Of a stretch of DNA of 64,000 nucleotides, positions 725-60,268 are shown piece after piece. The stretch lies in IMG/VR virus record IMGVR_UViG_3300045970_000794, positions 186,001 through 250,000 of that record. The stretch is one strand, 5' to 3'. Position 1 is the stretch's first letter. Every line of letters starts with the position of its first letter. A program made the position numbers and the translations under genes. The notes below the pieces were generated by a model that saw nothing but the letters and a program-made list of their open reading frames with translations, did not search any database and was not told the origin of the DNA.

Positions 725-1894
725 ATGGCTGCAAGTGAAATTGAGAAAACACGCTTATTTAGACAAGTTAGACATCAACTAGGTGCTCCAATGCGTAAAA
801 TTGAGTTACCAGACGAAAATTTAGTAACTTTATTGGAATTATCTATTGAAGATTACGCTGAATATGTACATAATTGGCTAATAGATAGTCAATGGTCATC
901 ATTTATAGGTCAACCTATTGATACTTTAGATATGGCATTCGCATTAACAACTAGAACATTAGATTTTGAGACACAATTTACTTATGCTTACTCAAAACAA
1001 GTTGGTTTACAAGCTAGAGGTCCATGGGAACTCAAAAAAGATTATGTTGAGATAGAAGCTGGTAGACAAGTTTATGAAATTCCAGCTGGTCGTGAGGTAA
1101 ATCAAGTATTATGGTTAACCCCATCGGTAACTAATCGTGCATTATTTGCTAATTTTGGTGGTTTTGATAACGGTATTGGTGGTGGTTACGCTCAAACTGG
1201 TTTTGGAGTCGGTGGTGGTGGTACTGGTGCTGGTTCTGGTGGTATGGGTGGAAGAGGTGGATATTATATCGCACCAGCATTTGATGTTTTATTGACTGCG
1301 GCCGATATGAATCTTAAACATAGATTATTAAGAAGTGATTTAGTATATAAAATAACCGCTGGGCCTAATGGTACTAAGTTATTACATTTAATTAGCACAC
1401 CAGGTTCTAAAATGACATTCGGTATGGGTGGTCAAGGTGGAAGTATGGCTGGTTCTAGTTCTTTAGGTATTGCTGGATGTCACGTATGGTATCATTATTA
1501 CGATACTAATGGTGATGTTGATGCATGTAGAGCGGCTAATTTAGATATTATTACGATGCCGAATGAAGTACCATTAACTAGATTAGATTTTGATGTGTTA
1601 AATGAACCTACAAAAATATTAATTCGTCAAATATTAACAGCTAGAGCTAAAATAACCTTAGGAAGAACTAGGGGTAAGTTTGGTGGTGTTGTTGGTCCAC
1701 CAGAAGCTGAAAGAACTATGGATTGGGAAAGTTTATTAACTGAAGGTAATGAAGAATATGGTAAAATATTTGAAAGATTAGCTGCTAGGTTAGAGCAAAT
1801 GACTAATACTAAAATGTTAGAGCGAAAAGCTAATGAAGCTGAAAACTTAAATAAAACATTAGCTTATAGACCCTTAGGATTTTACGTTATTTAG
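725..1894 (+). CDS. Neck/head-completion protein (T4 gp13-like)
   Basis: RHQLGAPMRKIELPDE N-terminus and GRTRGKFGGV C-terminal motif typical of gp13-like neck proteins. ATG 725 preferred to TTG 692 because it follows the ATATTTAT motif at 702. Confidence 0.7.
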   Translation: MAASEIEKTRLFRQVRHQLGAPMRKIELPDENLVTLLELSIEDYAEYVHNWLIDSQWSSFIGQPIDTLDMAFALTTRTLDFETQFTYAYSKQVGLQARGPWELKKDYVEIEAGRQVYEIPAGREVNQVLWLTPSVTNRALFANFGGFDNGIGGGYAQTGFGVGGGGTGAGSGGMGGRGGYYIAPAFDVLLTAADMNLKHRLLRSDLVYKITAGPNGTKLLHLISTPGSKMTFGMGGQGGSMAGSSSLGIAGCHVWYHYYDTNGDVDACRAANLDIITMPNEVPLTRLDFDVLNEPTKILIRQILTARAKITLGRTRGKFGGVVGPPEAERTMDWESLLTEGNEEYGKIFERLAARLEQMTNTKMLERKANEAENLNKTLAYRPLGFYVI

Positions 1895-2791
1895 TAATTT
1901 TTTTTCTAATTTTTTAATTATATCTTCATTATACCTAATAATAATTAAAGGGATGCTATTAATATAACAGTATCTCTTTTTTATTTTATCTCTTTTTCTA
2001 ATTGATTTTAGATTATCTAATCCACCCCAATATTTAATTGACCTATAATGTTGTTCACCATTATATTCGATACAAACATTATAATCTGGTAAATAAAAAT
2101 CAAATGGTAACATTATTTTATCTTTACAACCATTAAATCTATGCTGTGGTAAATATTTAATATTATTTATTAATAAAAATTCTCTAATAATTTTTTCACC
2201 CTTTGATGATTTACACTTAGAACACCCTTGACCTTTTAAATGATTACTAGGGGTTTGCTCAAATTCACCATGAATTGAACATATAATTTTAACTTTATTA
2301 TGTGCATTAATATAAATTACATTAGAATAATCATATTTATTTGTGTGAATTTCTAAAGATTTAGTTATGAATTTATCATTTTTAAACCTTTTACTATCAC
2401 CAACTGCTTTCCAACCACATTTTTGACAACCATAACTCTCCAAATGCCATTTAGCTTTTTGTTTAAATTCACCATGTATTGGGCATATTATATCTAAAAC
2501 ACTATGTTTATTTATATAATTAATGTTAGTATAATCGTATTTATTACCATGTTTTTGTTTTGCTTTAATTATAAATTCTTCATTAGTTAATTTTGAGTTT
2601 ATTTTACATTTTGGACATCCACTATTACTTCTTAGATGATTTCTTGGTTCCATTAAAAACTCACCATGTATTGGACATATTATGATTATGTTTTCGTATT
2701 GTGTTATATAATTAGCTTTTGAATAATCATATTTATCACCATGTTTTTGTACTGCTCGTTTAATAAAAATTTCTGTAGTTATCATATTCAT
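1874..2791 (-). CDS. Free-standing endonuclease: three Zn-finger-like repeats (YDYS..IICPIHGEF..GCxKC) plus C-terminal PD-(D/E)xK-like (Vsr/DUF559-type) domain
   Basis: Repeats visible in translation; C-terminal LPFDFYLPDYNVCIEYNGEQHY...RDKIKKRYC...IPLIIIRY. Confidence 0.8.
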   Translation of the reverse strand: MNMITTEIFIKRAVQKHGDKYDYSKANYITQYENIIIICPIHGEFLMEPRNHLRSNSGCPKCKINSKLTNEEFIIKAKQKHGNKYDYTNINYINKHSVLDIICPIHGEFKQKAKWHLESYGCQKCGWKAVGDSKRFKNDKFITKSLEIHTNKYDYSNVIYINAHNKVKIICSIHGEFEQTPSNHLKGQGCSKCKSSKGEKIIREFLLINNIKYLPQHRFNGCKDKIMLPFDFYLPDYNVCIEYNGEQHYRSIKYWGGLDNLKSIRKRDKIKKRYCYINSIPLIIIRYNEDIIKKLEKKLLNNVKS

Positions 2792-2902: not shown

Positions 2903-5900
2903 CTAGAAATTCCATTCATCATCGTCTTCGTTAAGAGTTATCTCAGCAACTTCTTGTATTGCTTCGACAATGACCTTTTCCTCTTCGTTAATGGACTGAT
3001 TTGGTTCTACTGATAGTACTGATTCATTTAATACTTTTTGTTGTTCTAAATGTTTTAACCAAAAGTCATAAGGTTTTTTAAGTTCATCATCATTAAGAGT
3101 CTCGTAAAATTCAGCTCTAGTTATGGCTTCATCCTCGTATTTAAATATATCATCTAGCTTACCGATTTCCTCATCGTATTTTTTAGATAGGAATATTAAT
3201 TCACCTTCTTCGTTAACACTTAAATACGCTATATTTACGTAGTTATTAATAACATCTATCGCAACATCATAATCAGAAGCTAATAATTCATTAATATTTT
3301 CTAATTGGTTAGCTTCAAGTCGTTTAATTAAATCATCAATTTTTTTACGTTCGAAAATAAGGTCACCTTCTTTCATTTTAGCTACTCTATCTAAATAGTC
3401 AGCTTTAATTCCTTCCCAATCTTCTAGCGAAACACCAATATCTTCTAGGTTATTTGGTGTTTTATTTACTTTAAGCCAAAATTTAATTTCTTTATCTTCG
3501 AAATTCATTAAATCTTTTTCGTAGTCATCTTGGTCGATTGGTTCATCTGGAATACCAGATACAAGTATACATTCTTCTTCGGTGAATATTTGAGGCTCCG
3601 CTAATGTCATTTTTTTAGTCTTCCTATCGGTTTTAGTTTCAACAAAAATCTTATCACGAATTTCTTTTTTGAATACAACCAATAATGGGGTTATTCGATT
3701 ATTAAATGCTGTTAAATACTTAGCCACATTATATTCTTCTGTGGTTAAATTGGAATCACTTTCAATATCCTCAGTTGGAATCAATTTACAATTTAATTTA
3801 ACGACACCTTTTTCAGTTTTAATATCACCATGTGATTTTTTTTCACCAGTATTAACATAGTAGATTACATCACCTAATTCAACTTTTAAATTATGTAAAA
3901 TTGCTAATTCCATATGTGCTTGCTTAGGCATTGGTTTACCAGCTTTATTAGTTTTTTTACATTTTTTCTTGTATTCATCAATACTAATCTTAACTTTAGA
4001 TTTTGATGCAATTTTAATTAAAGGAATTGAATAACTATAAATCATATCGACATATTTTTGATATAACTCAATAAATTCACTACCTTTATTATCCAATAAT
4101 AATACAATTGCTTCATCTAAAAATTCTTCAATGTATGTTGGCATTTTCTTAGATTTGATAGTATTACCAACCAATTTAATCTTAGTTTTACCTTTTTTGA
4201 TGATTTTATTAGCGTAATTCTTTCTAGCGAAATTAATAGTTGATTCACCGATTTCATCAATATCCAATCCCATTCTACCAATCATGTAAGTATCATTGAA
4301 TTCAGCAACTACAGCTTTTACACCGATATATTCTTTATCTTTTTCATTGAATGAATGTTTTCCATTTGAAATATACGTTATATTATCAATATCCAGTGGT
4401 ATTTCAAAGTTAAAACCATCGGTATTTTTAAGATTAATTAATCCAATTCCACCAATAAAAGTCCCATCATCAGTTGATATGTCATAAACAAAATTATTAA
4501 TATCTTTATTAGAAATTATTTCATTTTTCCAAACTTCATCAGACTTTTTTAATGTTTTTTTAGTAAAACTAGATAAATTACGATTATTATTTTTTAATGA
4601 AAATGAAATAAAATTTTGTTTATCTTTTCTGGTTTTAATTTTATACTCAATATTTAAATTTTTCATTAATAAACCAATACCAGCCATAGCAACTTGAGAC
4701 TTCATACCAATATCTGAACAAGTATCTATAGTATTTCCATAACCATCAGATGCACACACACCTTCTAAAAAATATTTTTTAATATCATTATTAGAATTTA
4801 AAATAATATTAGGTATTTTTTTCTCCCTGTAAGAAGTGTAAAAGTTTTCACAGAAAAATGTTGCGAATGTTGCATTGTGAACAACTAAATTATAGACACT
4901 ACTAGATTTTAAGTGGTTTTTTATTTCAGATTTAATTTTAAATTTAGTTTCTAAAATTAATTTTAATTTCTCCAAAAATTCTAAATTTGAATTGGATATC
5001 TTCCAGTCACTTCGTTTACCTTTATTAATATGTATTTCACCAGTTTTTTTGGACCTATATTTTTGCGTTCTTTTTGAACAATTAGCTGAACCATCACCCA
5101 AGAAAAAACCATATAACCAAGCCTCATCACTTGATATGCTATTTATTGAGTTAAAATCATTTAAATCATTACAAACATCAATCTTATCACCTCTTTTTAA
5201 TTTTGATGGTTTTATTTGAATATTATTCTGAAACAATGAATGGTCTTCAGTTACATTAACTAACCTATCTTTAGTGGTTATTCGGTGAATTGTTTTTTCA
5301 GTTTCATGTCTAAAAACATATTTAATATTTTTCCAACCATTTACAGTTAAAACTTCATATGGTTTAGCTTCAAAATCACGTAATTTATGAGAATCAATAT
5401 AGTTTGAATTTTCATTAAATAAATCACAAATTGGTAATATATCTAACATTCCATTTTTATATCTAATATAAACTGGTGTATCATATGTAACTGAATCACC
5501 CACAAGTGGTATAAAACCATATTTTTCAACAAAGAACTTAACCATAAGTCTTAAATACATTCTACCTCTACATGTTGTTTCTTCAGCCAAATCCATTTGT
5601 GACCATGGGAATACATCTGGCGCACCATAAGAACCGAAGAATGAGTTAGCAAGTATTTTAAGTGGTAATTGTTTTCTATCATAGAAACTACCAGTCTTCG
5701 TATCACCAAGACCATAAGCTTCATTCATCAAAGCTTTGTATTTATCACGATAATCAACAATATAGGTTAATAAACCTTTCATAACACCACTGATATCAAT
5801 ATCAGAGAATATATTCCAAGTTAATTGAGTTTTTGGGTAAAGAGCTGCATAATCGAGTTTTGAATATTTACCAGCTTTACCAACTCTAAGTAATCTTGAT

Positions 5901-7267
5901 AAACCACCAGTAAAATCACGTTTCTTATCAAATTCTGGAATAGCCAAATCATTTTCATATGACCAAGCTAACATTATCAACTTCCAAATGGTTGCAGTAC
6001 CCATGGTAAGGGTACGCATAAATGATGTTGGTAAAATTTTAGATAATAAGAATGATGCTTGATTAAAAATGAAACCTACTTGTTCGGTTTCCCATAAATC
6101 ATCTAAAAGATATCGTTCAGCAATATATTGCCCTGTAACAATTTCATATTCATCTTTAAGTGGTTTATTTTCAGTTATTTTATACCAATCACCATTGACA
6201 TCATTAAATGCATACTCATTTACTTTATCGGACCAAATAGTACCAATCATTCTACCATCATTAATATAAACACGATTTGGTTTATTAATTTCGGAAAATT
6301 TAGTAATATATTTTAATCCAGCTTTTTTAATATCAGAATTAATCGCTTGAGCTCTACGAACTGAATGATAAATGTCGGCAATGTTATATCCCCACATGTA
6401 TGTTTGTTCATAATATTCAGTATCACTACCTAATTTTAATGTTGATTGTTTACGTTTAATTTTAACATTAGGGTTTAATGTTTTTACCATTTTAGTAATA
6501 TCAACATTTAATAATCTACATCTTTCAAAGATATAGTACCAGTCAAATGTTTCTGAATTATAACCTTCAATAATATCTGGCTTTAATGCATCAATAATAC
6601 CAAAAAATGTTTCTAATGCTTGAACTTCTCTACTTAATCTATTTGGACCATCTTCAATTGTTAATATTGTCTCCCACCCACGATTATTTTTAATACCTAT
6701 TTGATTAATATGTGTATTATGTGGGTCTAAACCAGTTGTTTCTAAGTCGAACTGAAGTCTATGCAAATCATTATAATCATCAAATCCCTTGAATAATCGT
6801 TTACCAGATTGAATCATATATTGCTCAATTGGTGGTAATGTCATGAAATTCTTATTACCATTTATCTCACAACCAGCATCTTTAAAGAAATTTAATAATT
6901 GAAGGTAATTTTTGCTTCCAGTGATAAGGTATTTATATCCAGCGGCTAATCGTTGTGGTTCAGTACCTTCATCATTTTTAGTTTTAAGTAATTTAACTTT
7001 AATTTCAGCTTTACGCATTTCATTCTTCAACTTACCTCTATTTCCACCGTATAAATCATCCAATGCGGCTTCTTTCATCCAAAGGAATGGCTTATACTTT
7101 TCTTTTTTGACTATTTTAGTTGAAGTACCATAACCATTTGGTTGGTTAATTATTACTGAAACAGTTTCATCGTAATAATTAGCTTCAATTGCTGTAATGT
7201 ATTTTTGTGGGTCGTGACCATCGAAAAATTGTTCAATAGCCTCAGGTGTAACTTGTTTTTGCTCCAT
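2903..7267 (-). CDS. polB: Family B DNA polymerase containing an intein
   Basis: ExoI FDLETTG, ExoII GYNSETFDW, motif A DYAALYP, motif B KILANSFFG, motif C VGD|TDG split by intein, RKNYA. Likely start MEQKQ at 7267 (ORF track starts 7306). Confidence 0.95.
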   Translation of the reverse strand: MEQKQVTPEAIEQFFDGHDPQKYITAIEANYYDETVSVIINQPNGYGTSTKIVKKEKYKPFLWMKEAALDDLYGGNRGKLKNEMRKAEIKVKLLKTKNDEGTEPQRLAAGYKYLITGSKNYLQLLNFFKDAGCEINGNKNFMTLPPIEQYMIQSGKRLFKGFDDYNDLHRLQFDLETTGLDPHNTHINQIGIKNNRGWETILTIEDGPNRLSREVQALETFFGIIDALKPDIIEGYNSETFDWYYIFERCRLLNVDITKMVKTLNPNVKIKRKQSTLKLGSDTEYYEQTYMWGYNIADIYHSVRRAQAINSDIKKAGLKYITKFSEINKPNRVYINDGRMIGTIWSDKVNEYAFNDVNGDWYKITENKPLKDEYEIVTGQYIAERYLLDDLWETEQVGFIFNQASFLLSKILPTSFMRTLTMGTATIWKLIMLAWSYENDLAIPEFDKKRDFTGGLSRLLRVGKAGKYSKLDYAALYPKTQLTWNIFSDIDISGVMKGLLTYIVDYRDKYKALMNEAYGLGDTKTGSFYDRKQLPLKILANSFFGSYGAPDVFPWSQMDLAEETTCRGRMYLRLMVKFFVEKYGFIPLVGDSVTYDTPVYIRYKNGMLDILPICDLFNENSNYIDSHKLRDFEAKPYEVLTVNGWKNIKYVFRHETEKTIHRITTKDRLVNVTEDHSLFQNNIQIKPSKLKRGDKIDVCNDLNDFNSINSISSDEAWLYGFFLGDGSANCSKRTQKYRSKKTGEIHINKGKRSDWKISNSNLEFLEKLKLILETKFKIKSEIKNHLKSSSVYNLVVHNATFATFFCENFYTSYREKKIPNIILNSNNDIKKYFLEGVCASDGYGNTIDTCSDIGMKSQVAMAGIGLLMKNLNIEYKIKTRKDKQNFISFSLKNNNRNLSSFTKKTLKKSDEVWKNEIISNKDINNFVYDISTDDGTFIGGIGLINLKNTDGFNFEIPLDIDNITYISNGKHSFNEKDKEYIGVKAVVAEFNDTYMIGRMGLDIDEIGESTINFARKNYANKIIKKGKTKIKLVGNTIKSKKMPTYIEEFLDEAIVLLLDNKGSEFIELYQKYVDMIYSYSIPLIKIASKSKVKISIDEYKKKCKKTNKAGKPMPKQAHMELAILHNLKVELGDVIYYVNTGEKKSHGDIKTEKGVVKLNCKLIPTEDIESDSNLTTEEYNVAKYLTAFNNRITPLLVVFKKEIRDKIFVETKTDRKTKKMTLAEPQIFTEEECILVSGIPDEPIDQDDYEKDLMNFEDKEIKFWLKVNKTPNNLEDIGVSLEDWEGIKADYLDRVAKMKEGDLIFERKKIDDLIKRLEANQLENINELLASDYDVAIDVINNYVNIAYLSVNEEGELIFLSKKYDEEIGKLDDIFKYEDEAITRAEFYETLNDDELKKPYDFWLKHLEQQKVLNESVLSVEPNQSINEEEKVIVEAIQEVAEITLNEDDDEWNF
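4424..5494 (-). mobile_element. Intein (357 aa) with LAGLIDADG homing endonuclease in polymerase motif C
   Basis: Starts SVTYDTPVY after VGD; block B VTEDHSL; WLYGFFLGDGS and FLEGVCASDGY; ends VYDIST...INLKN before T(+1)DG. Confidence 0.92.
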
Positions 7268-7346
7268 ATGTATATAAAAAAATTCAGAAATAATGTAGAA
7301 ATACAAAATAACTTAATTTTTTCGTAAAAAGCAATAAAAAACGTAA

Positions 7347-7385: not shown

Positions 7386-7422
7386 TAAAAACTTTATCTT
7401 TTTTATAAATTAGTTATATTTA

Positions 7423-7451
7423 TATTTGTGGGAACATTGTTCCCACAAATA
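7423..7451. promoter_or_regulatory. Perfect 14-bp inverted repeat, candidate operator
   Basis: TATTTGTGGGAACA-T-TGTTCCCACAAATA; overlaps ATATTTAT (7416) and TATATTTG (7421); ends 21 nt before ATG 7473. Confidence 0.65.
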
Positions 7452-7472: not shown

Positions 7473-8045
7473 ATGAGAGAAGAAGAAATTAAAATTAGAA
7501 TATCATCGGACATTAAAACGGATTTTCAAAATATATGTGAAATTGAAAATACAACGATGTCTAATAAATTAACTGGATTTATTATTGATGAAATACATCG
7601 CAAAATAATTAAAACATTGGATAATAATACAATAACTAAACGTTTAATTAAATTTGGGATTAATAAAGGGGGTAGGTTCTATCAAAAGAATGAATTACTT
7701 AAAATTATATTGGATGAAGATGGTTTTGAAATATCTCATCTAGATTTTTTAAATAAAAAGACGTTATATGGTCAATTTGGTTTCCATTCTGAGGGTGATG
7801 TAATACATAAATATAATGCAACTCACTCTATCAAAAATCTTAGAATTGATGGTGATTGGTTAATTGGTGATATTACCATTTTGAATCCATCTATACTACC
7901 AGTATTGGATAATTTAGTTTTTAGACCTCGTTCATTTGGTATTATTAGTGAAAACGGTATTGTTAAAGATTTGGAGATAATCGGTTTTGATGCTATACTT
8001 AAAACAGATGATAAATTTATTGATTATGGTGATGAAGATATGTAG
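7473..8045 (+). CDS. RHH-like N-terminus fused to a degenerate prohead-protease (gp21-like) domain
   Basis: N-terminal EIKIRISSDIKTDFQNICE..TMSNKL; INKGGRFY, LYGQFGFH, ATHSIKNLRIDGDWLIGDITI, FRPRSFG and LEIIGFDAI align by eye with the protease at 59567..60268. Confidence 0.65.
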   Translation: MREEEIKIRISSDIKTDFQNICEIENTTMSNKLTGFIIDEIHRKIIKTLDNNTITKRLIKFGINKGGRFYQKNELLKIILDEDGFEISHLDFLNKKTLYGQFGFHSEGDVIHKYNATHSIKNLRIDGDWLIGDITILNPSILPVLDNLVFRPRSFGIISENGIVKDLEIIGFDAILKTDDKFIDYGDEDM

Positions 8046-8760
8046 TAAATGTCAATTACCTAAAGAATTGACTGAATTTAATAAACGAAGTAATTCTAAG
8101 GATGGTTTACGTTATGAATGTAAGTCATGTCAAAAATTAATTTATGAACAAAAAAGAGAATATTACATTATTAAAATGAAAAATAATCGTATTAAACACA
8201 TTGATGAATATGCTAAACGAGATAGAGAATATTATGAAACTAATCGAAATGGTATATTATATCAGAAAAAAGAATATTATAAAGAAAATAGAAATGAAAT
8301 ATTAATAAAGAAAAAAGAATATGATAAAGAAAATAGTGAACATAAAAAAGAATATAATAAAAATTATCGTAAAAATAATAAACCTAAACTAATGAAGTAT
8401 GCTAGGGATTACTCAAAAGAATGGCGTAAAACACATTCACATATTGTAGCTTGGAGGCGTGTACTATCATGCTCATTAAAAAGATTAAATAAATCAAAAG
8501 AAGGTCATACCATTGATTTACTAGGATATTCACCACACCAATTAAAAGAGCATTTAGAATCACTATTTACTGATGGTATGTCATGGGATAATTATGGTGA
8601 ATGGCATATTGACCATAAAATACCAGTTTGTAGCTTTTCAGCTGATACACCACCTAGTGTTGTAAATGCATTAAGTAATTTACAACCATTATGGGCTACC
8701 ACAAGGGAAATAAATGGGATTATTTACGAAGGTAATTTAAATAAATGGAAATATGATTAA
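7987..8760 (+). CDS. HNH homing endonuclease with N-terminal CxxC..CxxC finger; true start probably near 8026-8032
   Basis: KICSKC..ECKSC; GMSWDNYGEWHIDHKIP...NLQPLW..NLNK; paralog of 55292..55975. Confidence 0.85.
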   Translation: MMLYLKQMINLLIMVMKICSKCQLPKELTEFNKRSNSKDGLRYECKSCQKLIYEQKREYYIIKMKNNRIKHIDEYAKRDREYYETNRNGILYQKKEYYKENRNEILIKKKEYDKENSEHKKEYNKNYRKNNKPKLMKYARDYSKEWRKTHSHIVAWRRVLSCSLKRLNKSKEGHTIDLLGYSPHQLKEHLESLFTDGMSWDNYGEWHIDHKIPVCSFSADTPPSVVNALSNLQPLWATTREINGIIYEGNLNKWKYD

Positions 8761-9152
8761 CGATTTTTAATATCCGCATCCAAGACATGGATTGTTAAAG
8801 TATCTCTAATTGGTACTATCAGTGTTCCGATTACTTCCATATCATTTAATCCACCTAAAAATTCAATAGTGAATTGTCCACGATATGTTCCAGCTCTATT
8901 AGTATCTTTAGTTCTAAATGTATAGGTTACATAATATTCTTCAGTCATATCCAATGGAGTATCTAGTTTTAACTCACACCCAGCTGGTCGTTTTGCAACC
9001 TTAATTAAACCAGTATCAACATCAACCATACTGAAGTAAACGTTGGAGTTTTGTATTTGCTCGTGAAATGCTTTATAGTCATTTCTACCATCTTGAATTA
9101 ATTCCATCTTCAAAATATTTAATGTAGCACCTTTATTTATGAAAAAATCCAT
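8757..9152 (-). CDS. BppU-like baseplate/Ig-like virion protein
   Basis: MDFFINKGATLNILKMEL...YTFRTKDTNRAGTYRGQFTIEF..TLIVP pattern; end of the tail-fibre operon. Confidence 0.5.
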   Translation of the reverse strand: MDFFINKGATLNILKMELIQDGRNDYKAFHEQIQNSNVYFSMVDVDTGLIKVAKRPAGCELKLDTPLDMTEEYYVTYTFRTKDTNRAGTYRGQFTIEFLGGLNDMEVIGTLIVPIRDTLTIHVLDADIKNR

Positions 9153-9861
9153 ATAATTCACTGATTTTAATTTTATTATTTATTCTTTCAGTTACATTAA
9201 TTAATAACATTTGTGGTGAAAATAATGAGCTAGAACCTTTAGAAAGATTTTCAAAACTCGGAATCGCCCTTAAATTAATAATATCAGCAACTATTTTAAC
9301 ATCTAAATTAACCATAAAACAATCTTTTATTGATACTATATGGTCTATATGGTAATCATTCAGACCTTTACCTACTTTATCTAAATTTTCAATTTGTGTA
9401 GAGCATTGTTTTATAGTTTTTTTAGTATAATATTTAACCCTACTCTTATATTTATAAAATTCTGATTTAGTTTTTAAATATTCATCATATTCAATACCAT
9501 ATTTAGTTTTAAACATTTTAACCATTGATTTATTTCTATCAATATATTTATGGTCTCGTTTAATTATTGGTAAATTTTTTAATTTTATTATTTTATTTAA
9601 AGTATCATATTTAATACCACACTCAATTGCAATTGTTTTTAATGTTTTAGTTTTATCATAATAAATAGATAATACTTTTGAAATAATTCCTTCATTTAAA
9701 TATTTTATATTAACCCCACCACGTTTTTTTCTATTACATTTCATACATAATGTATTTTTATTCGTGGTAGATTTATAACTATCTTTTCGTGTGTAAGTTA
9801 TATTTTCACCACACCCGTCAGTTGGGCATTTACGTTCGAATATTTTATTATCAGTTGTCAT
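9133..9861 (-). CDS. HNH homing endonuclease
   Basis: N-terminal CPTDGC..CMKC; C-terminal YHIDHIVS...NLRAIPSFENLSKG. Confidence 0.8.
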   Translation of the reverse strand: MTTDNKIFERKCPTDGCGENITYTRKDSYKSTTNKNTLCMKCNRKKRGGVNIKYLNEGIISKVLSIYYDKTKTLKTIAIECGIKYDTLNKIIKLKNLPIIKRDHKYIDRNKSMVKMFKTKYGIEYDEYLKTKSEFYKYKSRVKYYTKKTIKQCSTQIENLDKVGKGLNDYHIDHIVSIKDCFMVNLDVKIVADIINLRAIPSFENLSKGSSSLFSPQMLLINVTERINNKIKISELYGFFHK

Positions 9862-9881
9862 ATGATTATAAATATAACACT

Positions 9882-11768
9882 TTAAACCAATAATATGTTT
9901 AAAGTTCCACCTGTAATAAATAATTTATATCTTAGACCAGTATCAGCGGCTGCAAGTATTATTGATGTATCAGCATTTGATACTACTTCTAATGCATTAA
10001 CATAAGTTGTATTGTTAGTATTACCCGTTACTCCAATACCCAATACTACAGTTCCAATACCATTTGCTGTTGATGCTGAACCATGGACAAATGATAATAC
10101 TCCAATCGCCTCTGTTAAATAACCACCAGCATGACTTGATATACCACTTGCGGTAGTTGACCAACCTTCGCTATGACTTGTATAACCAATCGCAGTTGTA
10201 CTAATACCTTCAGAGTGACTACCACTACCACTAGCAGTAGTTCGATATCCTTCAGCATGTGAACCAAATAAACCAATTGCTGTGGTTTCTTTACCTTCAG
10301 CATGACTATTATTACCAACCGCAGTAGTTCGATATCCTTCACTATGACTGTAATCACCGATTGCAGTTGTATCATAACCTTCACCATGACTAGCAGAGCC
10401 ACTTGTTACAGTATTAACACCTTCAGCATGACTATAATCACCAAATGTTTTTGAACCTATACCTTCAGCATGACTGTATAATCCAGTTGTTATTGTATTA
10501 ACACCTTCAACGTGACTATAATCACCCAAAGCAATTGTTTGACTACCTTCTGCATGTGTATATTGACCTAATGCTTTAGAAAAGCGTCCTTCAGCATGAC
10601 TAATTTGACCATTTGCTATAGTACTATTACCTTCAGCATGACTATAATCACCCAAAGCAATTGTTTGACTACCTTCTGCATGTGAATTGATTCCAATTGC
10701 TGTCGTATTGGTACCTTCAGCATGACTAACCCATCCATTTGCTGTGGTTGAAAGACCTTCAGTATGACTAATTTGACCATTTGCTATAGTACTATTACCT
10801 TCTGCATGACTACCACCACCAATTGCCGTTGTCATTTGCCCTTCGGCATGACTATAAGTTCCGCTAGCTATTGTACTACCACCTTCAGCATGACTATTAT
10901 CACCAACCGCAGTAGTTGAACCACCTTCACTATGACTATAAACACCCCCAGCTATCGTAGCATTACCTTCAGCATGACTACTTTGACCAGTTGCTATTGT
11001 ACTATCACCTTCAGCATGACTATTTACACCTAACGCATGTACATTAGTTCCAATAGCAAATGCTGGGCGACCTAATAAAGTAATTAAATTATAAAAACTA
11101 TCACCACTTATAATATTATAAGTTAAAGCTGATATTGAAGAATCAACAATATAAGTTGAATTACTAACAGCATCATAATAATAATCAGTATAACTACAAC
11201 CAACATTAATTAATTGTGTTACTCCAACACCATCATCTAATAAAAATTCAGAGCAAAATTCACCAATATAAACACTCCATTCATTTACAACATCACCAGT
11301 CAAAACTATAGCTGGACCAGAGTATGTTGGGTCACTTGCTGTTATTGTTATAGCTGATACTATTGTTATTGGTGTTTGAATGTAAAGTATTTCACTAGCA
11401 TTTGCTATCGAACCTACACCAATTGCAAAACTAGCTGTAGTCATAGCAGTTGTACCAGACCCAGCAGCTAAAGCATAATCACCAGTAGAATAAATACCAC
11501 TATTATTAATCGCTTTAATTGAATAATTACCAGTAGAACCAGATGTCCAATAGCCCGCATCAATTAAGCCACTAAGATTGGTTGATATTATTTCACCATT
11601 TAATTTAGTATAAACCAAATTACCGCCACTATAAGTTAATCCAGATAATGACATACCTTTTAGATTAACAAAATTATAATCAACATCAGAATGTGATAAT
11701 ACTGAACCAACGGTAATATCATTATATGGACTCGTAATTGTCCTAAGTTTTAATTGTTCATTTGCCAT
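9882..11768 (-). CDS. Tail fibre/spike-like protein with about 20 14-aa SHAEG repeats (YadA-head-like beta-roll)
   Basis: Tandem SHAEGxxTxAxGxx repeats; N-terminal domain shared with 13075..15951. Confidence 0.75.
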   Translation of the reverse strand: MANEQLKLRTITSPYNDITVGSVLSHSDVDYNFVNLKGMSLSGLTYSGGNLVYTKLNGEIISTNLSGLIDAGYWTSGSTGNYSIKAINNSGIYSTGDYALAAGSGTTAMTTASFAIGVGSIANASEILYIQTPITIVSAITITASDPTYSGPAIVLTGDVVNEWSVYIGEFCSEFLLDDGVGVTQLINVGCSYTDYYYDAVSNSTYIVDSSISALTYNIISGDSFYNLITLLGRPAFAIGTNVHALGVNSHAEGDSTIATGQSSHAEGNATIAGGVYSHSEGGSTTAVGDNSHAEGGSTIASGTYSHAEGQMTTAIGGGSHAEGNSTIANGQISHTEGLSTTANGWVSHAEGTNTTAIGINSHAEGSQTIALGDYSHAEGNSTIANGQISHAEGRFSKALGQYTHAEGSQTIALGDYSHVEGVNTITTGLYSHAEGIGSKTFGDYSHAEGVNTVTSGSASHGEGYDTTAIGDYSHSEGYRTTAVGNNSHAEGKETTAIGLFGSHAEGYRTTASGSGSHSEGISTTAIGYTSHSEGWSTTASGISSHAGGYLTEAIGVLSFVHGSASTANGIGTVVLGIGVTGNTNNTTYVNALEVVSNADTSIILAAADTGLRYKLFITGGTLNILLV

Positions 11769-54001: not shown

Positions 54002-55318
54002 ATGAAAAAATTAACAAATGAAGCGTTTTTTAAAGGAATAGAAAAAGAACATGGGGATAAATATGATTATTCTAAACTTGAGTATATAAATATGAGTACT
54101 AAAGTAACTATCATATGTCCAATACATGGCGAATTTAAGCAAAGACCACATAATCATGTAGAAGGTAAAGGGTGTCCTAAATGTGGATTTGATAGAACAA
54201 GAAATAGTAAAGTTAAAACAACTAATAAATTTATTGCACAAGCCAATGAAATTCACAATAATAAATATGATTATTCTAAAACCAATTATACAACTGGTAT
54301 TATAAAAGTAATTATTATATGTCCAATACACGGTGAATTTAAACAAGACCCATATAACCACCTACAAGGTAAGGGGTGCCCTAAATGTGGTAAAGTTTAT
54401 AAACCAACAACAGAAGAGTTCATTCAAAAAGTTAGGGGAGTTCATGGAGATAAATATGATTATTCTTTATTTAAATATGTTACCAGTTCAACAGCAAGTG
54501 AAATAATATGTCCAATACATGGAAAATTTAAACAAACACCACAAAACCACCTTAAAGGGAAAGGCTGTTTTAAATGTGGTAAAGCTTATGCTAGTAGGTA
54601 AAGAAGATATAAATTAGATGATGTTATTATTAAATTAAAAAATAAAGGGTTTTATGATGAATCATATAAATATGAAGAAATTTTATTTATAGATGGTGGG
54701 TCGAAAATGTTAATTACTAATAAATATACTAATACAAAACATATTACACCAGTACACAATATATTAAGACGAAAAACTAATTGTTGTTTTGATAATGCTA
54801 TTAATAAACAAGAATACCTTATTAGTATGAGTAATATTGTTCATGATAATAAATATAATTATTCTAAAGTTAATTATAAATCAGCTATATTTAAAATTAT
54901 AATTACATGTCCTACGCATGGTGATTTTAAACAAACTTTTAATTCACATTTAAGAGGTTCTGGGTGTCCTAGATGTTCTGATAGTAAAGGTGAGAAAAAA
55001 ATAAGAAAATTACTAAAGAGTAATGATATTATATTTATCCATCAATATAAATTTAATAATTGTAAGAATGTAAGACCTTTACCTTTTGATTTTTATTTAC
55101 CAGATTATAACGTGTGTATTGAATATAATGGAAAACAACATTATGAACCGATTAAACATTTTGGTGGTAAAAAACAATTAATTTATATACAAAAAAATGA
55201 TAAAATTAAACAAGAATTTTGTGAAAAAGAAGGTATTAAATTAATCACTGTAAAATATAATGAAGATATTGAAGAACGATTAACCGAAGAGTTAAAGAAT
55301 TTGAGTTCCTTTACTTAA
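54002..55318 (+). pseudogene. Zn-finger-repeat PD-(D/E)xK-like endonuclease interrupted by one in-frame TAA
   Basis: ORFs 54002..54601 and 54707..55318 are in one frame; only TAA 54599-54601 interrupts. C-terminus PFDFYLPDYNVCIEYNG matches 1874..2791. Confidence 0.8.
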
Positions 55319-55975
55319 ATTGTCCTCACCCCATAATGGTTGAAGATTATCCAAACGCCAACACTCCTTAAACTCTAGGTCATCAGTACTTTCAAACATA
55401 AAACTATTCATCGGTTTTTTATGGTCTACATGCCACTCACCATAATTATCCCACGTCATTCCATCGGTAAATAAGTTCTCTAAATGAATCATCAATTCTT
55501 CGATACTATAACCTAATAATGCAAATGTTTTATTCGTCTTATTAACATTACGTTCTTTAAGCATTTGCCATACCGCTGTGCGTGTTCTAACACCTAAACG
55601 ATACTTTGGGTCCTCAGCACGTCTTTTACGCTCATAATCACGCTTATATTTGTTTACATGTTCTTTATTTTCATCTCTCCAACTTGAGTGATACTTTCGC
55701 AATTCTTTTCTATTTTCGTTAGACCATTCTTTATGGTATTCGCTAAGGTCTTCTTTATTTTTTTCATAATAACGTTTAGCGGCAGCTGGTTTCCCACCTA
55801 TAAATCGTTTACCAGAAGGTCCAAACACAACACCGTTTTCTTTAAGTGTTCTAATTATTATCGTTTTATGTATACCCATTCGTTCACTAATAGTCGTAGA
55901 CCCAAGTAATTTATCATTATACATTTTCAAACACTCTTGTGTTTGCTCTGGTGTTAATTCTATTTTTTTACTCAT
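55292..55975 (-). CDS. HNH homing endonuclease with N-terminal HTH
   Basis: GMTWDNYGEWHVDHKKP..NLQPLWGEDNLSKG; own TATCTTTG promoter at 55979-55986 (minus). Confidence 0.85.
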   Translation of the reverse strand: MSKKIELTPEQTQECLKMYNDKLLGSTTISERMGIHKTIIIRTLKENGVVFGPSGKRFIGGKPAAAKRYYEKNKEDLSEYHKEWSNENRKELRKYHSSWRDENKEHVNKYKRDYERKRRAEDPKYRLGVRTRTAVWQMLKERNVNKTNKTFALLGYSIEELMIHLENLFTDGMTWDNYGEWHVDHKKPMNSFMFESTDDLEFKECWRLDNLQPLWGEDNLSKGTQIL

Positions 55976-56022
55976 ATACAAAGATACTAATAATAGTTTA
56001 TAAAGTCAAGTAATATTAACAA

Positions 56023-59566: not shown

Positions 59567-60268
59567 TTACAATAAAAATTTATCTAAAAAATCATTTAAA
59601 TTTTCATTTATTATTTTACTACCATTAATTTTTGATTCCATGAATGGTGATGCTTTTTCTCTATTTCTGAATATCCAAGAACCTGGTGTACTAGGACTAG
59701 TAACAATATCCCAACAAATTATTTCAAAATCATCTTGTACGATAAATCTACCATTAACTTCTTCCAATGAACCAACACCTCTTGATGAAACACCAATCAT
59801 AATACCTTTTCTTAGTAAATTAGCAACCATATCACCTTGACATGAAATAATACCAAAATTGATAAATCCTGGTGACATAATAATTTCCATTTCACCTACC
59901 AAGGTATTACCTTCCCACCACATTTTGGTTATATTGTGTGCGATGCGTTCAACTGAAATAATAGAAGATTCTGGATGGTCTGATTCACCAATAGCTCTAA
60001 CGTCTCTGATTAGCTCTTGATAATTATTTGCTTCACGTTTTAATATTTGTTCGGAATAAATTCGTCCATTACGGTTTTCAATACCATATTTTTGTAATAC
60101 AACGAATACTTTTAATGGTTCTTCAATTACGAATTGTCTGGATTCTAGTTTCTGAATTTCAGTTATGAATTTTTTGTTTCGAGAATCCCTAGGGTCAATA
60201 TACCCATCATTCTCGATTAAATATCCATAACCAGATTCACCAGCTTTTAATATTTTAATATCTGACAT
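59567..60268 (-). CDS. Prohead core protease (T4 gp21-like)
   Basis: NRNGRIY, GESDHP, GVSSRGVGS, DIVTSPS. Confidence 0.93.
   Translation of the reverse strand: MSDIKILKAGESGYGYLIENDGYIDPRDSRNKKFITEIQKLESRQFVIEEPLKVFVVLQKYGIENRNGRIYSEQILKREANNYQELIRDVRAIGESDHPESSIISVERIAHNITKMWWEGNTLVGEMEIIMSPGFINFGIISCQGDMVANLLRKGIMIGVSSRGVGSLEEVNGRFIVQDDFEIICWDIVTSPSTPGSWIFRNREKASPFMESKINGSKIINENLNDFLDKFLL

What the first reader, a model, noticed from the sequence alone, without database searches (positions are those of the whole stretch)
7473..8045. DNA-binding domain fused to an apparently inactive prohead protease
After an RHH-like N-terminus the protein follows the real protease motif by motif: NKGGRFY/NRNGRIY, ATHSIKNL/IAHNITKM, LIGDITI/LVGEMEI, LEIIGFD/FEIICWD. 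The catalytic segments GESDHP and GVSSRG become GQFGFH and VFRPRS. Inference: a pseudo-protease that senses scaffold or capsid propeptides to time nuclease expression, or a dominant-negative inhibitor of head assembly in competing phages.
Basis: partly seen in the sequence, partly recalled or inferred. Interest (0 to 1): 0.75.

Follow-up and report, generated by a model that had tools for sequence, protein, structure and literature searches.

The report
Phage repressor with dead protease domain
A 362-kb phage fuses a ribbon-helix-helix DNA-binding domain to a catalytically dead copy of its own capsid-maturation protease; the protein most likely represses its own small operon, which also carries a homing-type HNH nuclease.

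Summary
ORF 7473-8045 (+) encodes a 190-aa protein with an N-terminal ribbon-helix-helix (RHH) fold (residues 1-48). Residues 50-177 have the T4 gp21 (peptidase S77) fold: Z 12.0 to PDB 5jbl, and hhalign probability 98.8% against the phage's real protease family.

The catalytic His is Phe here and a Tyr/His/Phe mix across the family. The catalytic Ser is Arg in 158 of 170 family members. The Asp is kept.

New here: a perfect 21-bp palindrome lies 25 nt upstream of the ATG. It is unique in the genome and conserved in position in all relatives examined, which fits an RHH operator. The downstream HNH nuclease overlaps the gene by 14 nt and is present in 12 of 15 related loci.

The same RHH and operator also occur with two unrelated C-terminal domains, and these versions are followed by the same nuclease family too. 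That argues against the dead protease being a specific nuclease inhibitor. It fits better as an interchangeable oligomerisation or sensor module.

I rate this a new variant of a known kind (an RHH autoregulator), with moderate interest.

The parts
7398..7422 (+). Promoter-like bipartite motif CTTTTT-N12-TATATTTA. The ATATTTA element lies a fixed 4 nt before the palindrome in most relatives.
   Evidence: The motif class CTTTT-N11-17-ATATTTA occurs 21 times in the genome against 8.8 in shuffles. It also precedes the real protease gene and about 11 homing-endonuclease-like genes. Promoter function is inferred, not shown.
7427..7447 (.). Candidate operator: the perfect 21-bp palindrome TGTGGGAACA-T-TGTTCCCACA, 25 nt upstream of the ATG.
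   Evidence: Unique in the 362-kb genome even with 5 mismatches allowed. The relaxed pattern TGTN4ACN2TGTN4ACA hits only this site and the site upstream of the RHH paralogue. It is conserved in position in all 15 related loci examined. Its symmetry co-varies: 88.6% of cells paired against 80.5% in shuffles, 0 of 500 shuffles as high. An RNA hairpin is not conserved: -14.6 to -1.5 kcal/mol, with 6 of 13 loci no better than shuffles.
7473..8045 (+). Gene for the RHH / dead-protease fusion protein (190 aa, P0001).
   Evidence: There are 48 homologues besides the query at E<=0.01, most 54-68% identical, all with open frames, on phage contigs of up to about 350 kb.
7473..7616 (+). Ribbon-helix-helix DNA-binding domain (aa 1-48).
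   Evidence: VIA-align Z 5-7 to TacA, CopA, NikR, PutA, DinJ, Arc and omega. Weak RelB/DinJ HMM hit at E 0.047. Two homologues carry a precomputed PF10723 hit.
7620..8003 (+). Catalytically dead S77 (gp21-type) prohead-protease fold (aa 50-177).
7782..7784 (+). Phe104 codon, at the position of the catalytic His (His98 of the real protease).
   Evidence: hhalign register. Across 170 family members this column holds Tyr 65, His 46 and Phe 27.
7923..7925 (+). Arg151 codon, at the position of the catalytic Ser (Ser161 of the real protease), within the family-wide FRPR motif.
   Evidence: Arg in 158 of 170 family members, Ser in 4.
7989..7991 (+). Asp173 codon, the retained third triad position (Asp187 of the real protease).
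   Evidence: Asp in 149 of 170. The His-Ser-Asp triad is as stated in PMC5694885.
8004..8042 (+). Acidic C-terminal tail (…KFIDYGDEDM), modelled with low confidence.
   Evidence: It resembles the DPYGEENW tails of stand-alone family members.
8032..8760 (+). HNH nuclease gene (242 aa, P0317). Its start overlaps the end of the fusion gene by 14 nt. Zn-ribbon N-terminus, K/Y/N-rich linker, C-terminal HNH motif (WHIDH…NLQPL…N).
   Evidence: (PHROG 1035, 6.7e-22). A homologue lies directly downstream in 12 of 15 related loci.
59567..60268 (-). The phage's real prohead protease (233 aa, P0002), the parent fold of the dead domain.
   Evidence: Pfam PF03420 1.6e-22. PDB 5jbl 6.9e-15. It is the only Peptidase_S77 hit in the genome.

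Best explanation
The protein is a ribbon-helix-helix transcriptional autorepressor. Two RHH dimers probably bind the unique 21-bp palindrome, which abuts the promoter-like motif of the protein's own gene. This would limit transcription of a two-gene operon: the fusion gene, then an HNH homing-type nuclease.

The C-terminal domain is a duplicate of the phage's gp21-type capsid-maturation protease. It has lost its Ser nucleophile (now Arg) and its His base (now Phe) and no longer cleaves. It is kept as a non-catalytic module. The most likely roles are to hold RHH dimers together on the operator, or to receive an input (a bound protein or peptide) that changes DNA binding.

Shown: the two folds, the residue replacements, the palindrome and its conservation, and the operon layout and its recurrence. 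Inferred: DNA binding at that site, repression, and the role of the dead domain.
For: - Folds and homology.
- Catalytic columns across 170 family members.
- The 21-bp palindrome is unique in the genome.
- The relaxed pattern hits only two sites in 362 kb, each 25-32 nt before the ATG of one of the genome's only two RHH genes.
- The palindrome sits a fixed 4 nt after the ATATTTA motif in 12 of 14 loci where it was measured, and is present upstream of the gene in all 15 relatives.
- Its symmetry is maintained through changes on both arms, for example GGTTAC/GTAACC in L021 and swapped arms in L004.
- A hairpin is not conserved.
- A scan of IMG/VR using the DNA pattern alone gave 32 stretches. 19 of them lie 7-27 nt before an RHH gene.
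- RHH strand residue 7 tracks the operator. Lys goes with G-rich arms in 13 loci, Asn with AAGTCC arms in 2 loci that carry different C-domains, and Thr with AT-rich arms in 1 locus.
- A 21-bp site made of two 10-bp subsites 11 bp apart matches the Arc and Mnt tetramer operators (established knowledge of the RHH family).
- Operon layout: a 14-nt overlap here, and gaps of 0-3 nt or short overlaps in relatives.
Against: - There is no experimental DNA binding, and no curated RHH HMM reaches its cut-off for this protein.
- The ATATTTA motif is only a promoter candidate.
- T4 gp21 is reported as a pentamer (PMC9958956). If that were retained it would sit awkwardly with 2-fold RHH dimers.
- The invariant FRPR motif at the old active site suggests a specific new ligand or partner rather than a mere glue domain. 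This explanation does not identify it.
- Three relatives keep the gene and palindrome without the nuclease, so control of the nuclease cannot be the gene's only purpose.
Confidence: 0.6

Rival explanations
1. The adjacency reflects homing, not regulation. The HNH gene is a free-standing homing endonuclease that targets RHH genes or their operator region and so keeps landing beside them. The fusion protein has a separate job and merely lends its promoter.
For: - The nuclease is one of about ten paralogues in this genome, and only two sit behind RHH genes.
- It is present in 12 related loci and cleanly absent in 3.
- The histories of the two genes disagree: Mantel r 0.34; L005 vs L018 are 97% identical in the fusion protein but 67-68% in the nuclease.
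- Between L005 and L018 the fusion gene is 92-98% identical at DNA level across most of its length, while flanking DNA is 64-84%. That looks like a gene-conversion tract.
- The same nuclease family follows RHH genes with three different C-domains.
Against: - This rival is compatible with co-transcription, so it is not exclusive of the best explanation.
- No promoter-like ATATTTA motif lies between the two genes.
- No cleavage site is known.
Confidence: 0.3
2. One reading: the dead protease domain still binds protease substrates or products (scaffold or capsid propeptides, or peptides ending in Glu). Such binding would switch the repressor and so tie operon expression to head maturation.
For: - The old active-site loop is the most conserved part of the family and now carries two Arg residues (FRPR). 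That would suit an acidic ligand.
- The promoter-like motif class is shared with the real protease gene.
- Having the same RHH with variable C-domains resembles regulators that swap sensor domains.
Against: - There is no direct evidence.
- In T4 the real protease acts inside closed proheads (PMC9958956), so its peptides need not reach a cytoplasmic repressor.
- The cleavage specificity of this phage's protease is unknown.
Confidence: 0.15
3. A toxin-antitoxin-like or immunity pair: the dead protease domain binds and neutralises the HNH nuclease, while the RHH domain represses the operon.
For: - RHH gene first, overlapping the nuclease gene, with a palindromic site at the promoter. This is the classical type II layout.
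- The nearest structural matches of the N-domain are antitoxins.
Against: - Three unrelated C-terminal domains pair with the same nuclease family.
- Three relatives have the fusion gene alone.
- About eight paralogous nucleases in the genome have no RHH partner.
- The histories of the two genes are incongruent.
Confidence: 0.08
4. One reading: the dead domain joins or mimics real prohead proteases. It would act as a dominant-negative against competing phages, as a decoy for host sensors of phage protease activity, or as a tag that loads the DNA-binding protein into proheads.
For: - Same fold as the real protease, with the Asp retained.
- Prohead proteases are now reported as triggers of CBASS defence (PMC12991175).
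- The gene evolves faster than the backbone: about 60% identity where the neighbouring helicase is 65-83%. That is common for conflict genes.
Against: - It lacks the N- and C-terminal extensions of the real protease.
- It is fused to a site-specific DNA-binding domain.
- It is not in the head gene module.
Confidence: 0.07

Closest known systems
Arc/Mnt/CopG-type ribbon-helix-helix repressors, and the RHH antitoxins (RelB/DinJ, TacA, ParD)
   Same: An N-terminal strand-helix-helix fold of about 45 aa. The gene sits directly behind a short palindromic site at its own promoter, and that site is 21 bp long like the Arc operator. A C-terminal extra domain is present, as in Mnt, NikR and AmrZ.
   Different: The C-terminal domain is a 130-aa dead capsid-protease fold, which I did not find reported for any RHH protein (paper searches). 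No curated RHH HMM passes its cut-off. The downstream gene is an HNH nuclease of a multi-copy homing-type family, not a classical toxin.
T4 gp21 prohead protease (MEROPS/Pfam S77; PDB 5jbl), and the phage's own copy at 59567-60268
   Same: The core fold (Z 12.0, rmsd 1.8 A over 116 residues). The motif order NxNGRxY, GE/Q…, SHxI, LxGD, …RxxG, FDA is kept. The Asp is retained.
   Different: The Ser nucleophile is Arg and the His base is Phe/Tyr/His. The N-terminal propeptide and C-terminal tail are absent. It is not in the head module, and it is fused to a DNA-binding domain.
Small prohead-protease paralogues of phiKZ-like giant phages (SPN3US gp117, 201phi2-1 gp206, PhiPA3 gp143; PMC5694885)
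   Same: A second, short (136-145 aa), diverged copy of the prohead protease encoded away from the head genes of a giant phage, with unknown function. The stand-alone relatives of this domain are 120-170 aa.
   Different: Those descend from the S80 branch and are reported to keep the Ser and Asp. This family has Arg at the Ser position. Here the domain is fused to an RHH domain. A direct relationship between the two groups was not tested.
I-TevI as autorepressor of its own homing-endonuclease gene (phage T4; from my own knowledge of Edgell, Derbyshire and Belfort 2004, not retrieved here)
   Same: Expression of a phage homing-type nuclease is held down by a protein bound to an operator at its promoter.
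   Different: In T4 the nuclease itself is the repressor. Here a separate RHH protein encoded upstream would do the job.

Membership tests
Ribbon-helix-helix (Arc/MetJ/CopG) superfamily | Strand-helix-helix fold of about 45 residues | tested here: met
   Model residues 1-51 superpose on more than 30 solved RHH domains at Z 5-7 and rmsd 1.0-2.9 A. The paralogue's model behaves the same way.
Ribbon-helix-helix (Arc/MetJ/CopG) superfamily | Match to a curated RHH sequence family above its cut-off | tested here: not met
   Pfam gives no RHH hit for P0001. NCBIfam RelB_DinJ scores E 0.047, 13.9 bits, against a cut-off of 45.65. Two close homologues carry a precomputed PF10723 hit.
Ribbon-helix-helix (Arc/MetJ/CopG) superfamily | Binds a repeated or palindromic operator as a dimer or dimer of dimers | tested here: inconclusive
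   A candidate 21-bp operator is unique in the genome, conserved in position, and co-varies with strand residue 7.
Peptidase S77 (T4 gp21 prohead protease) | Herpesvirus-protease-like core fold and sequence homology | tested here: met
   5jbl top hit, Z 12.0; hhalign 98.8%, E 4.9e-17; 1.3e-13.
Peptidase S77 (T4 gp21 prohead protease) | Pfam PF03420 above the gathering score | tested here: not met
   P0001 gives no PF03420 hit at E<=1. The relative P0054 reaches 25.6 bits against a cut-off of 27.
Peptidase S77 (T4 gp21 prohead protease) | Catalytic Ser nucleophile | tested here: not met
   Arg151 here. Arg in 158 of 170 family members, Ser in 4. The aligned residue is Ala in the solved gp21 chain.
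Peptidase S77 (T4 gp21 prohead protease) | Catalytic His | tested here: not met
   Phe104 here. The column is not conserved: Tyr 65, His 46, Phe 27 of 170.
Peptidase S77 (T4 gp21 prohead protease) | Catalytic Asp | tested here: met
   Asp173 aligns with Asp187 of the real protease. Asp in 149 of 170.
Peptidase S77 (T4 gp21 prohead protease) | Encoded in the head module beside portal, scaffold and capsid genes | tested here: not met
   The gene lies beside DNA polymerase here, and beside the gp13-like, glutaredoxin-like and SNF2-helicase genes in relatives. The real protease is about 52 kb away in a run of large same-strand ORFs that looks like a T4-type head module by position; those neighbours were not identified.
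Type II toxin-antitoxin pair (RHH antitoxin) | Antitoxin gene first, overlapping the toxin gene, with an operator at the promoter | tested here: met
Type II toxin-antitoxin pair (RHH antitoxin) | The C-terminal part of the antitoxin is matched to its toxin, and the two are inherited together | tested here: not met
   The same nuclease family follows three unrelated C-domains. 3 of 15 loci lack the nuclease. Pairwise identities of the two genes correlate poorly (r 0.29-0.34).
Type II toxin-antitoxin pair (RHH antitoxin) | Direct binding and neutralisation of the toxin | not testable with these tools
   Needs a pull-down and a toxicity-rescue assay.
Free-standing homing endonuclease (for the downstream gene 8032-8760) | HNH catalytic motif; multi-copy and sporadic distribution between conserved genes | tested here: met
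   The HNH motif residues are invariant. There are about 10 paralogues in the genome. Presence/absence polymorphism occurs at the same site.
Free-standing homing endonuclease (for the downstream gene 8032-8760) | Cleaves nuclease-free alleles and is copied into them | not testable with these tools
   Needs in vitro cleavage assays or co-infection crosses.

The most novel reading that the evidence does not exclude
Large uncultured phages may carry a family of modular regulators. In each, one conserved RHH/operator pair is joined to an interchangeable input domain, one of which is a capsid-maturation protease turned into a non-catalytic receptor, with Arg-Pro-Arg in the old active site. Through that domain the phage would read the state of its own head assembly, or the presence of a rival's protease, and switch a homing nuclease on or off. 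That would be the first transcription factor built from a viral assembly protease, and a direct link between capsid maturation and inter-phage warfare.
Probability: 0.12. Interest if true: 0.85.

Novelty: new variant of a known kind. Interest (0 to 1): 0.55.

Why it matters
Pseudoenzymes reused as regulators are well known in eukaryotes, for example pseudokinases and c-FLIP. For phage structural enzymes they are barely described. The only precedent I found is an unexplained note of small protease paralogues in phiKZ-like phages (PMC5694885).

This locus offers a concrete, testable case. It has a defined DNA site, a defined protein, a downstream nuclease, and a family of at least 170 dead-protease domains with a remodelled active site. 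It also shows how a multi-copy homing nuclease in a giant phage may be kept under repressor control.

If the dead domain proves to be a sensor, it would show how a phage couples gene expression to assembly.

Tried and rejected
- **Complex prediction.** The fusion protein with the nuclease returned 'no answer' (score 0.00). This counts neither for nor against binding.
- **Curated libraries.** Pfam, PHROGs, NCBIfam and PADLOC gave nothing above cut-off on P0001 itself. A profile of the close family found no PDB sequence.
- **The search for related loci with the broad C-domain alignment** failed because no stretch was conserved enough. The close-family alignment was used instead.
- **RNA hairpin reading of the palindrome.** Rejected: stability ranges from -14.6 to -1.5 kcal/mol, and 6 of 13 loci fold no better than shuffles.
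- **Terminator reading.** Rejected: the site lies between divergent gene starts.
- **GTG 7428 as start codon.** Rejected: it lies inside the palindrome, and homologues start at the Met of 7473.
- **Type-2 C-terminal domain of the RHH paralogue.** The fold gave no match beyond the RHH part.
- **Contexts of stand-alone dead proteases.** Short contigs and one 735-kb phage showed neither head genes nor a nuclease nearby, so they gave no functional clue.
- **Cultured phages.** None carries the family. The only tblastn hits were uncultured huge phages, plus the real proteases of Tenacibaculum phages.
- **Literature.** Searches found no report of an RHH/protease-fold fusion.

Full report
**Setting.** The window is bases 186001-250000 of a 362,102-bp virus record with direct terminal repeats and about 30% G+C. 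It is a T4-like giant phage with a gp13-like gene and one S77 protease. It also has a family-B DNA polymerase interrupted by a LAGLIDADG-type intein.

**1. The observation**

The ORF from ATG 7473 to the stop at 8043-8045 encodes 190 aa (P0001). All six quoted peptides are in it. The six partner peptides are in ORF 59567-60268(-) (P0002), which matches Pfam Peptidase_S77 at 1.6e-22 and T4 gp21 (PDB 5jbl) at 6.9e-15.

The direct pairwise likeness is weak: 27% over 59 aa, E 7e-4. It passes.
- P0001 has 48 homologues at E<=0.01, most 54-68% identical.
- It has 158 more distant relatives, most of which are stand-alone 120-170-aa copies of the C-terminal domain.
- A profile of 37 such domains aligns with a profile of 24 real proteases at hhalign probability 98.8%, E 4.9e-17 over 123 columns.
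- In the phage's own genome that profile finds only P0001 and the real protease (1.3e-13).
- Several intermediates hit PHROG 207 'head maturation protease' at 1e-10 to 1e-17.
- An AlphaFold model (pLDDT 79.9) has T4 gp21 as its best structural match. Foldseek gives prob 1.00. An exhaustive VIA-align search gives Z 12.0, rmsd 1.8 A over 116 residues, followed by herpesvirus proteases at Z 6-8.
- Residues 1-51 superpose on more than thirty solved ribbon-helix-helix domains at Z 5-7.

**2. Catalytic residues**

His98 becomes Phe104, Ser161 becomes Arg151, Arg163 matches Arg153 and Gly166 matches Gly156. The two positions are Ala in the solved gp21 chain, as expected for an engineered inactive enzyme.

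I aligned 170 family domains against seven real proteases:

| Triad column | Residues in 170 dead-protease domains |
|---|---|
| Ser | Arg in 158, Ser in 4 |
| His | Tyr 65, His 46, Phe 27 |
| Asp | Asp in 149 |

The His-Ser-Asp triad is as stated in PMC5694885. The nucleophile was therefore lost once, long ago. The remodelled loop (FRPR) is now the most conserved motif of the family. The domain also lacks the roughly 50 N-terminal and 45 C-terminal residues of the real protease.

**3. The candidate operator**

The perfect palindrome TGTGGGAACA-T-TGTTCCCACA lies at 7427-7447, 25 nt before the ATG.
- It is unique in the genome even with five mismatches allowed.
- The relaxed pattern TGTN4ACN2TGTN4ACA occurs at only two places in 362 kb. 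One is here. The other is 32 nt before the ATG of the only other RHH gene of the genome.
- Every related locus has the element upstream of the gene. Where it was measured, it lies 7-32 nt before the ATG, and 4 nt after an invariant ATATTTA in 12 of 14 loci.
- The outer TGT/ACA triplets are fixed, while the centres of the arms change symmetrically. L021 has GGTTAC/GTAACC, and L004 has the arms swapped. 88.6% of cells are paired against 80.5% in shuffles, with 0 of 500 shuffles as high.
- A conserved RNA hairpin is not supported.
- A scan of all IMG/VR with the DNA pattern alone returned 32 stretches. 19 of them lie 7-27 nt before a gene that starts with the RHH sequence.
- RHH strand residue 7 is Lys where the arms are G-rich (13 loci). 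It is Asn in two loci that share AAGTCC arms but carry different C-terminal domains. It is Thr where the arms are AT-rich. This is suggestive but rests on few independent events.

**4. The nuclease link**

The next gene (8032-8760, P0317) overlaps P0001 by 14 nt. It is an HNH nuclease with a Zn-ribbon N-terminus.

A homologue follows the P0001 homologue in 12 of 15 related loci. The genome's second RHH gene has an unrelated 75-aa C-domain and is followed by a paralogous HNH gene, 34% identical at E 5e-19. RHH genes with that second C-domain type, and with a third type, are also followed by this nuclease family in other phages.

Several results show that the nuclease is homing-endonuclease-like and has its own history:
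- It is one of about ten paralogues in this genome.
- It is cleanly absent from three relatives that keep the RHH gene and the palindrome.
- Pairwise identities of the two genes correlate poorly, r 0.29-0.34.
- Between L005 and L018 the fusion gene is 92-98% identical in DNA across most of its length, while everything around it, nuclease included, is 64-84%. Elsewhere the fusion protein plateaus near 60% identity although the neighbouring helicase is 65-83%.

The fusion gene is therefore fast-evolving and occasionally exchanged as a module.

**5. Mechanism**

The best reading is an RHH autorepressor acting on a single operator at its own promoter. It would control an operon in which a homing-type HNH nuclease rides.

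The dead protease is most simply an interchangeable non-catalytic module. Three unrelated C-domains serve the same RHH, operator and nuclease family. That argues against a nuclease-specific inhibitor and for either an oligomerisation domain (as in Mnt, NikR or AmrZ) or a variable input domain. The strictly conserved Arg-Pro-Arg in the former active site hints at a specific acidic ligand or partner, which I could not identify.

**6. Comparison and novelty**

RHH autoregulators are a known kind. Short unexplained paralogues of prohead proteases in giant phages were noted once before (PMC5694885, section 17). I found no report of a fusion of the two, nor of the family-wide Ser-to-Arg remodelling.

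This is a new variant of a known kind, with interest 0.55.

Noticed in passing
window 2903-7306 (-): The family-B DNA polymerase gene (1467-aa ORF) carries a LAGLIDADG-type intein: Pfam PF14528 at aa 716-805. Full-length relatives' polymerases are 1189-1251 aa.
   Followed up: partly
genome-wide; in the window at 2799 (-), 7398 (+) and 60286 (-): A promoter-like class, CTTTT-N11-17-ATATTTA, occurs 21 times against 8.8 in shuffles. It precedes the real protease gene, both RHH genes and about 11 homing-endonuclease-like genes (GIY-YIG, HNH and HGxKYDYS-repeat types). It may be the phage's late promoter.
   Followed up: partly
L002 1440-2483 (genome 252320-253363, just past the window end): A second cassette with the same plan: an ATATTTA motif, the 21-bp site TGTTATAACG-T-TGTATAAACA, an RHH gene with an unrelated 75-aa C-domain (124 aa), then a paralogous HNH nuclease (200 aa).
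   Followed up: yes
window 55292-55981 (-), 9133-9861 (-) and 1874-2791 (-): More homing-endonuclease-like genes lie in the window. One is a paralogue of the HNH nuclease. One is an HNH-like 242-aa ORF (PHROG 5104). One is a 305-aa ORF with three HGxKYDYS repeats.
   Followed up: no
stand-alone family members (P0054, P0061, P0064; L025 3384-3920): Many stand-alone dead proteases end in DPYGEENW(E/D). P0001 and several close relatives end in a similar acidic tail (DYGDEDM, DDGNEDL). This could be a shared partner-binding tail or a self-binding tail.
   Followed up: no
P0051 (500 aa): The RHH domain plus the first half of the dead protease (54% identical over residues 1-110) runs on into the recombinase and zinc-ribbon domains of a large serine recombinase that lacks its own catalytic N-domain. 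This is either a gene disrupted by an integrating element or an assembly chimera.
   Followed up: no
L002 1-1500 (genome 250881-252380): A 1.5-kb stretch with no ORF of 50 aa or more on either strand and no tRNA gene.
   Followed up: no
L018 1243-4194 and L020 1270-4230: The SNF2-type helicase downstream of the cassette is about 370 aa longer in these two relatives than in L005 (983 and 986 aa against 615). This suggests an intein or another insertion.
   Followed up: no
window 9882-11768 (-): A 628-aa ORF is built largely of repeats of the type xxSHAEGxxTxAxG, next to large fibre-like ORFs.
   Followed up: no
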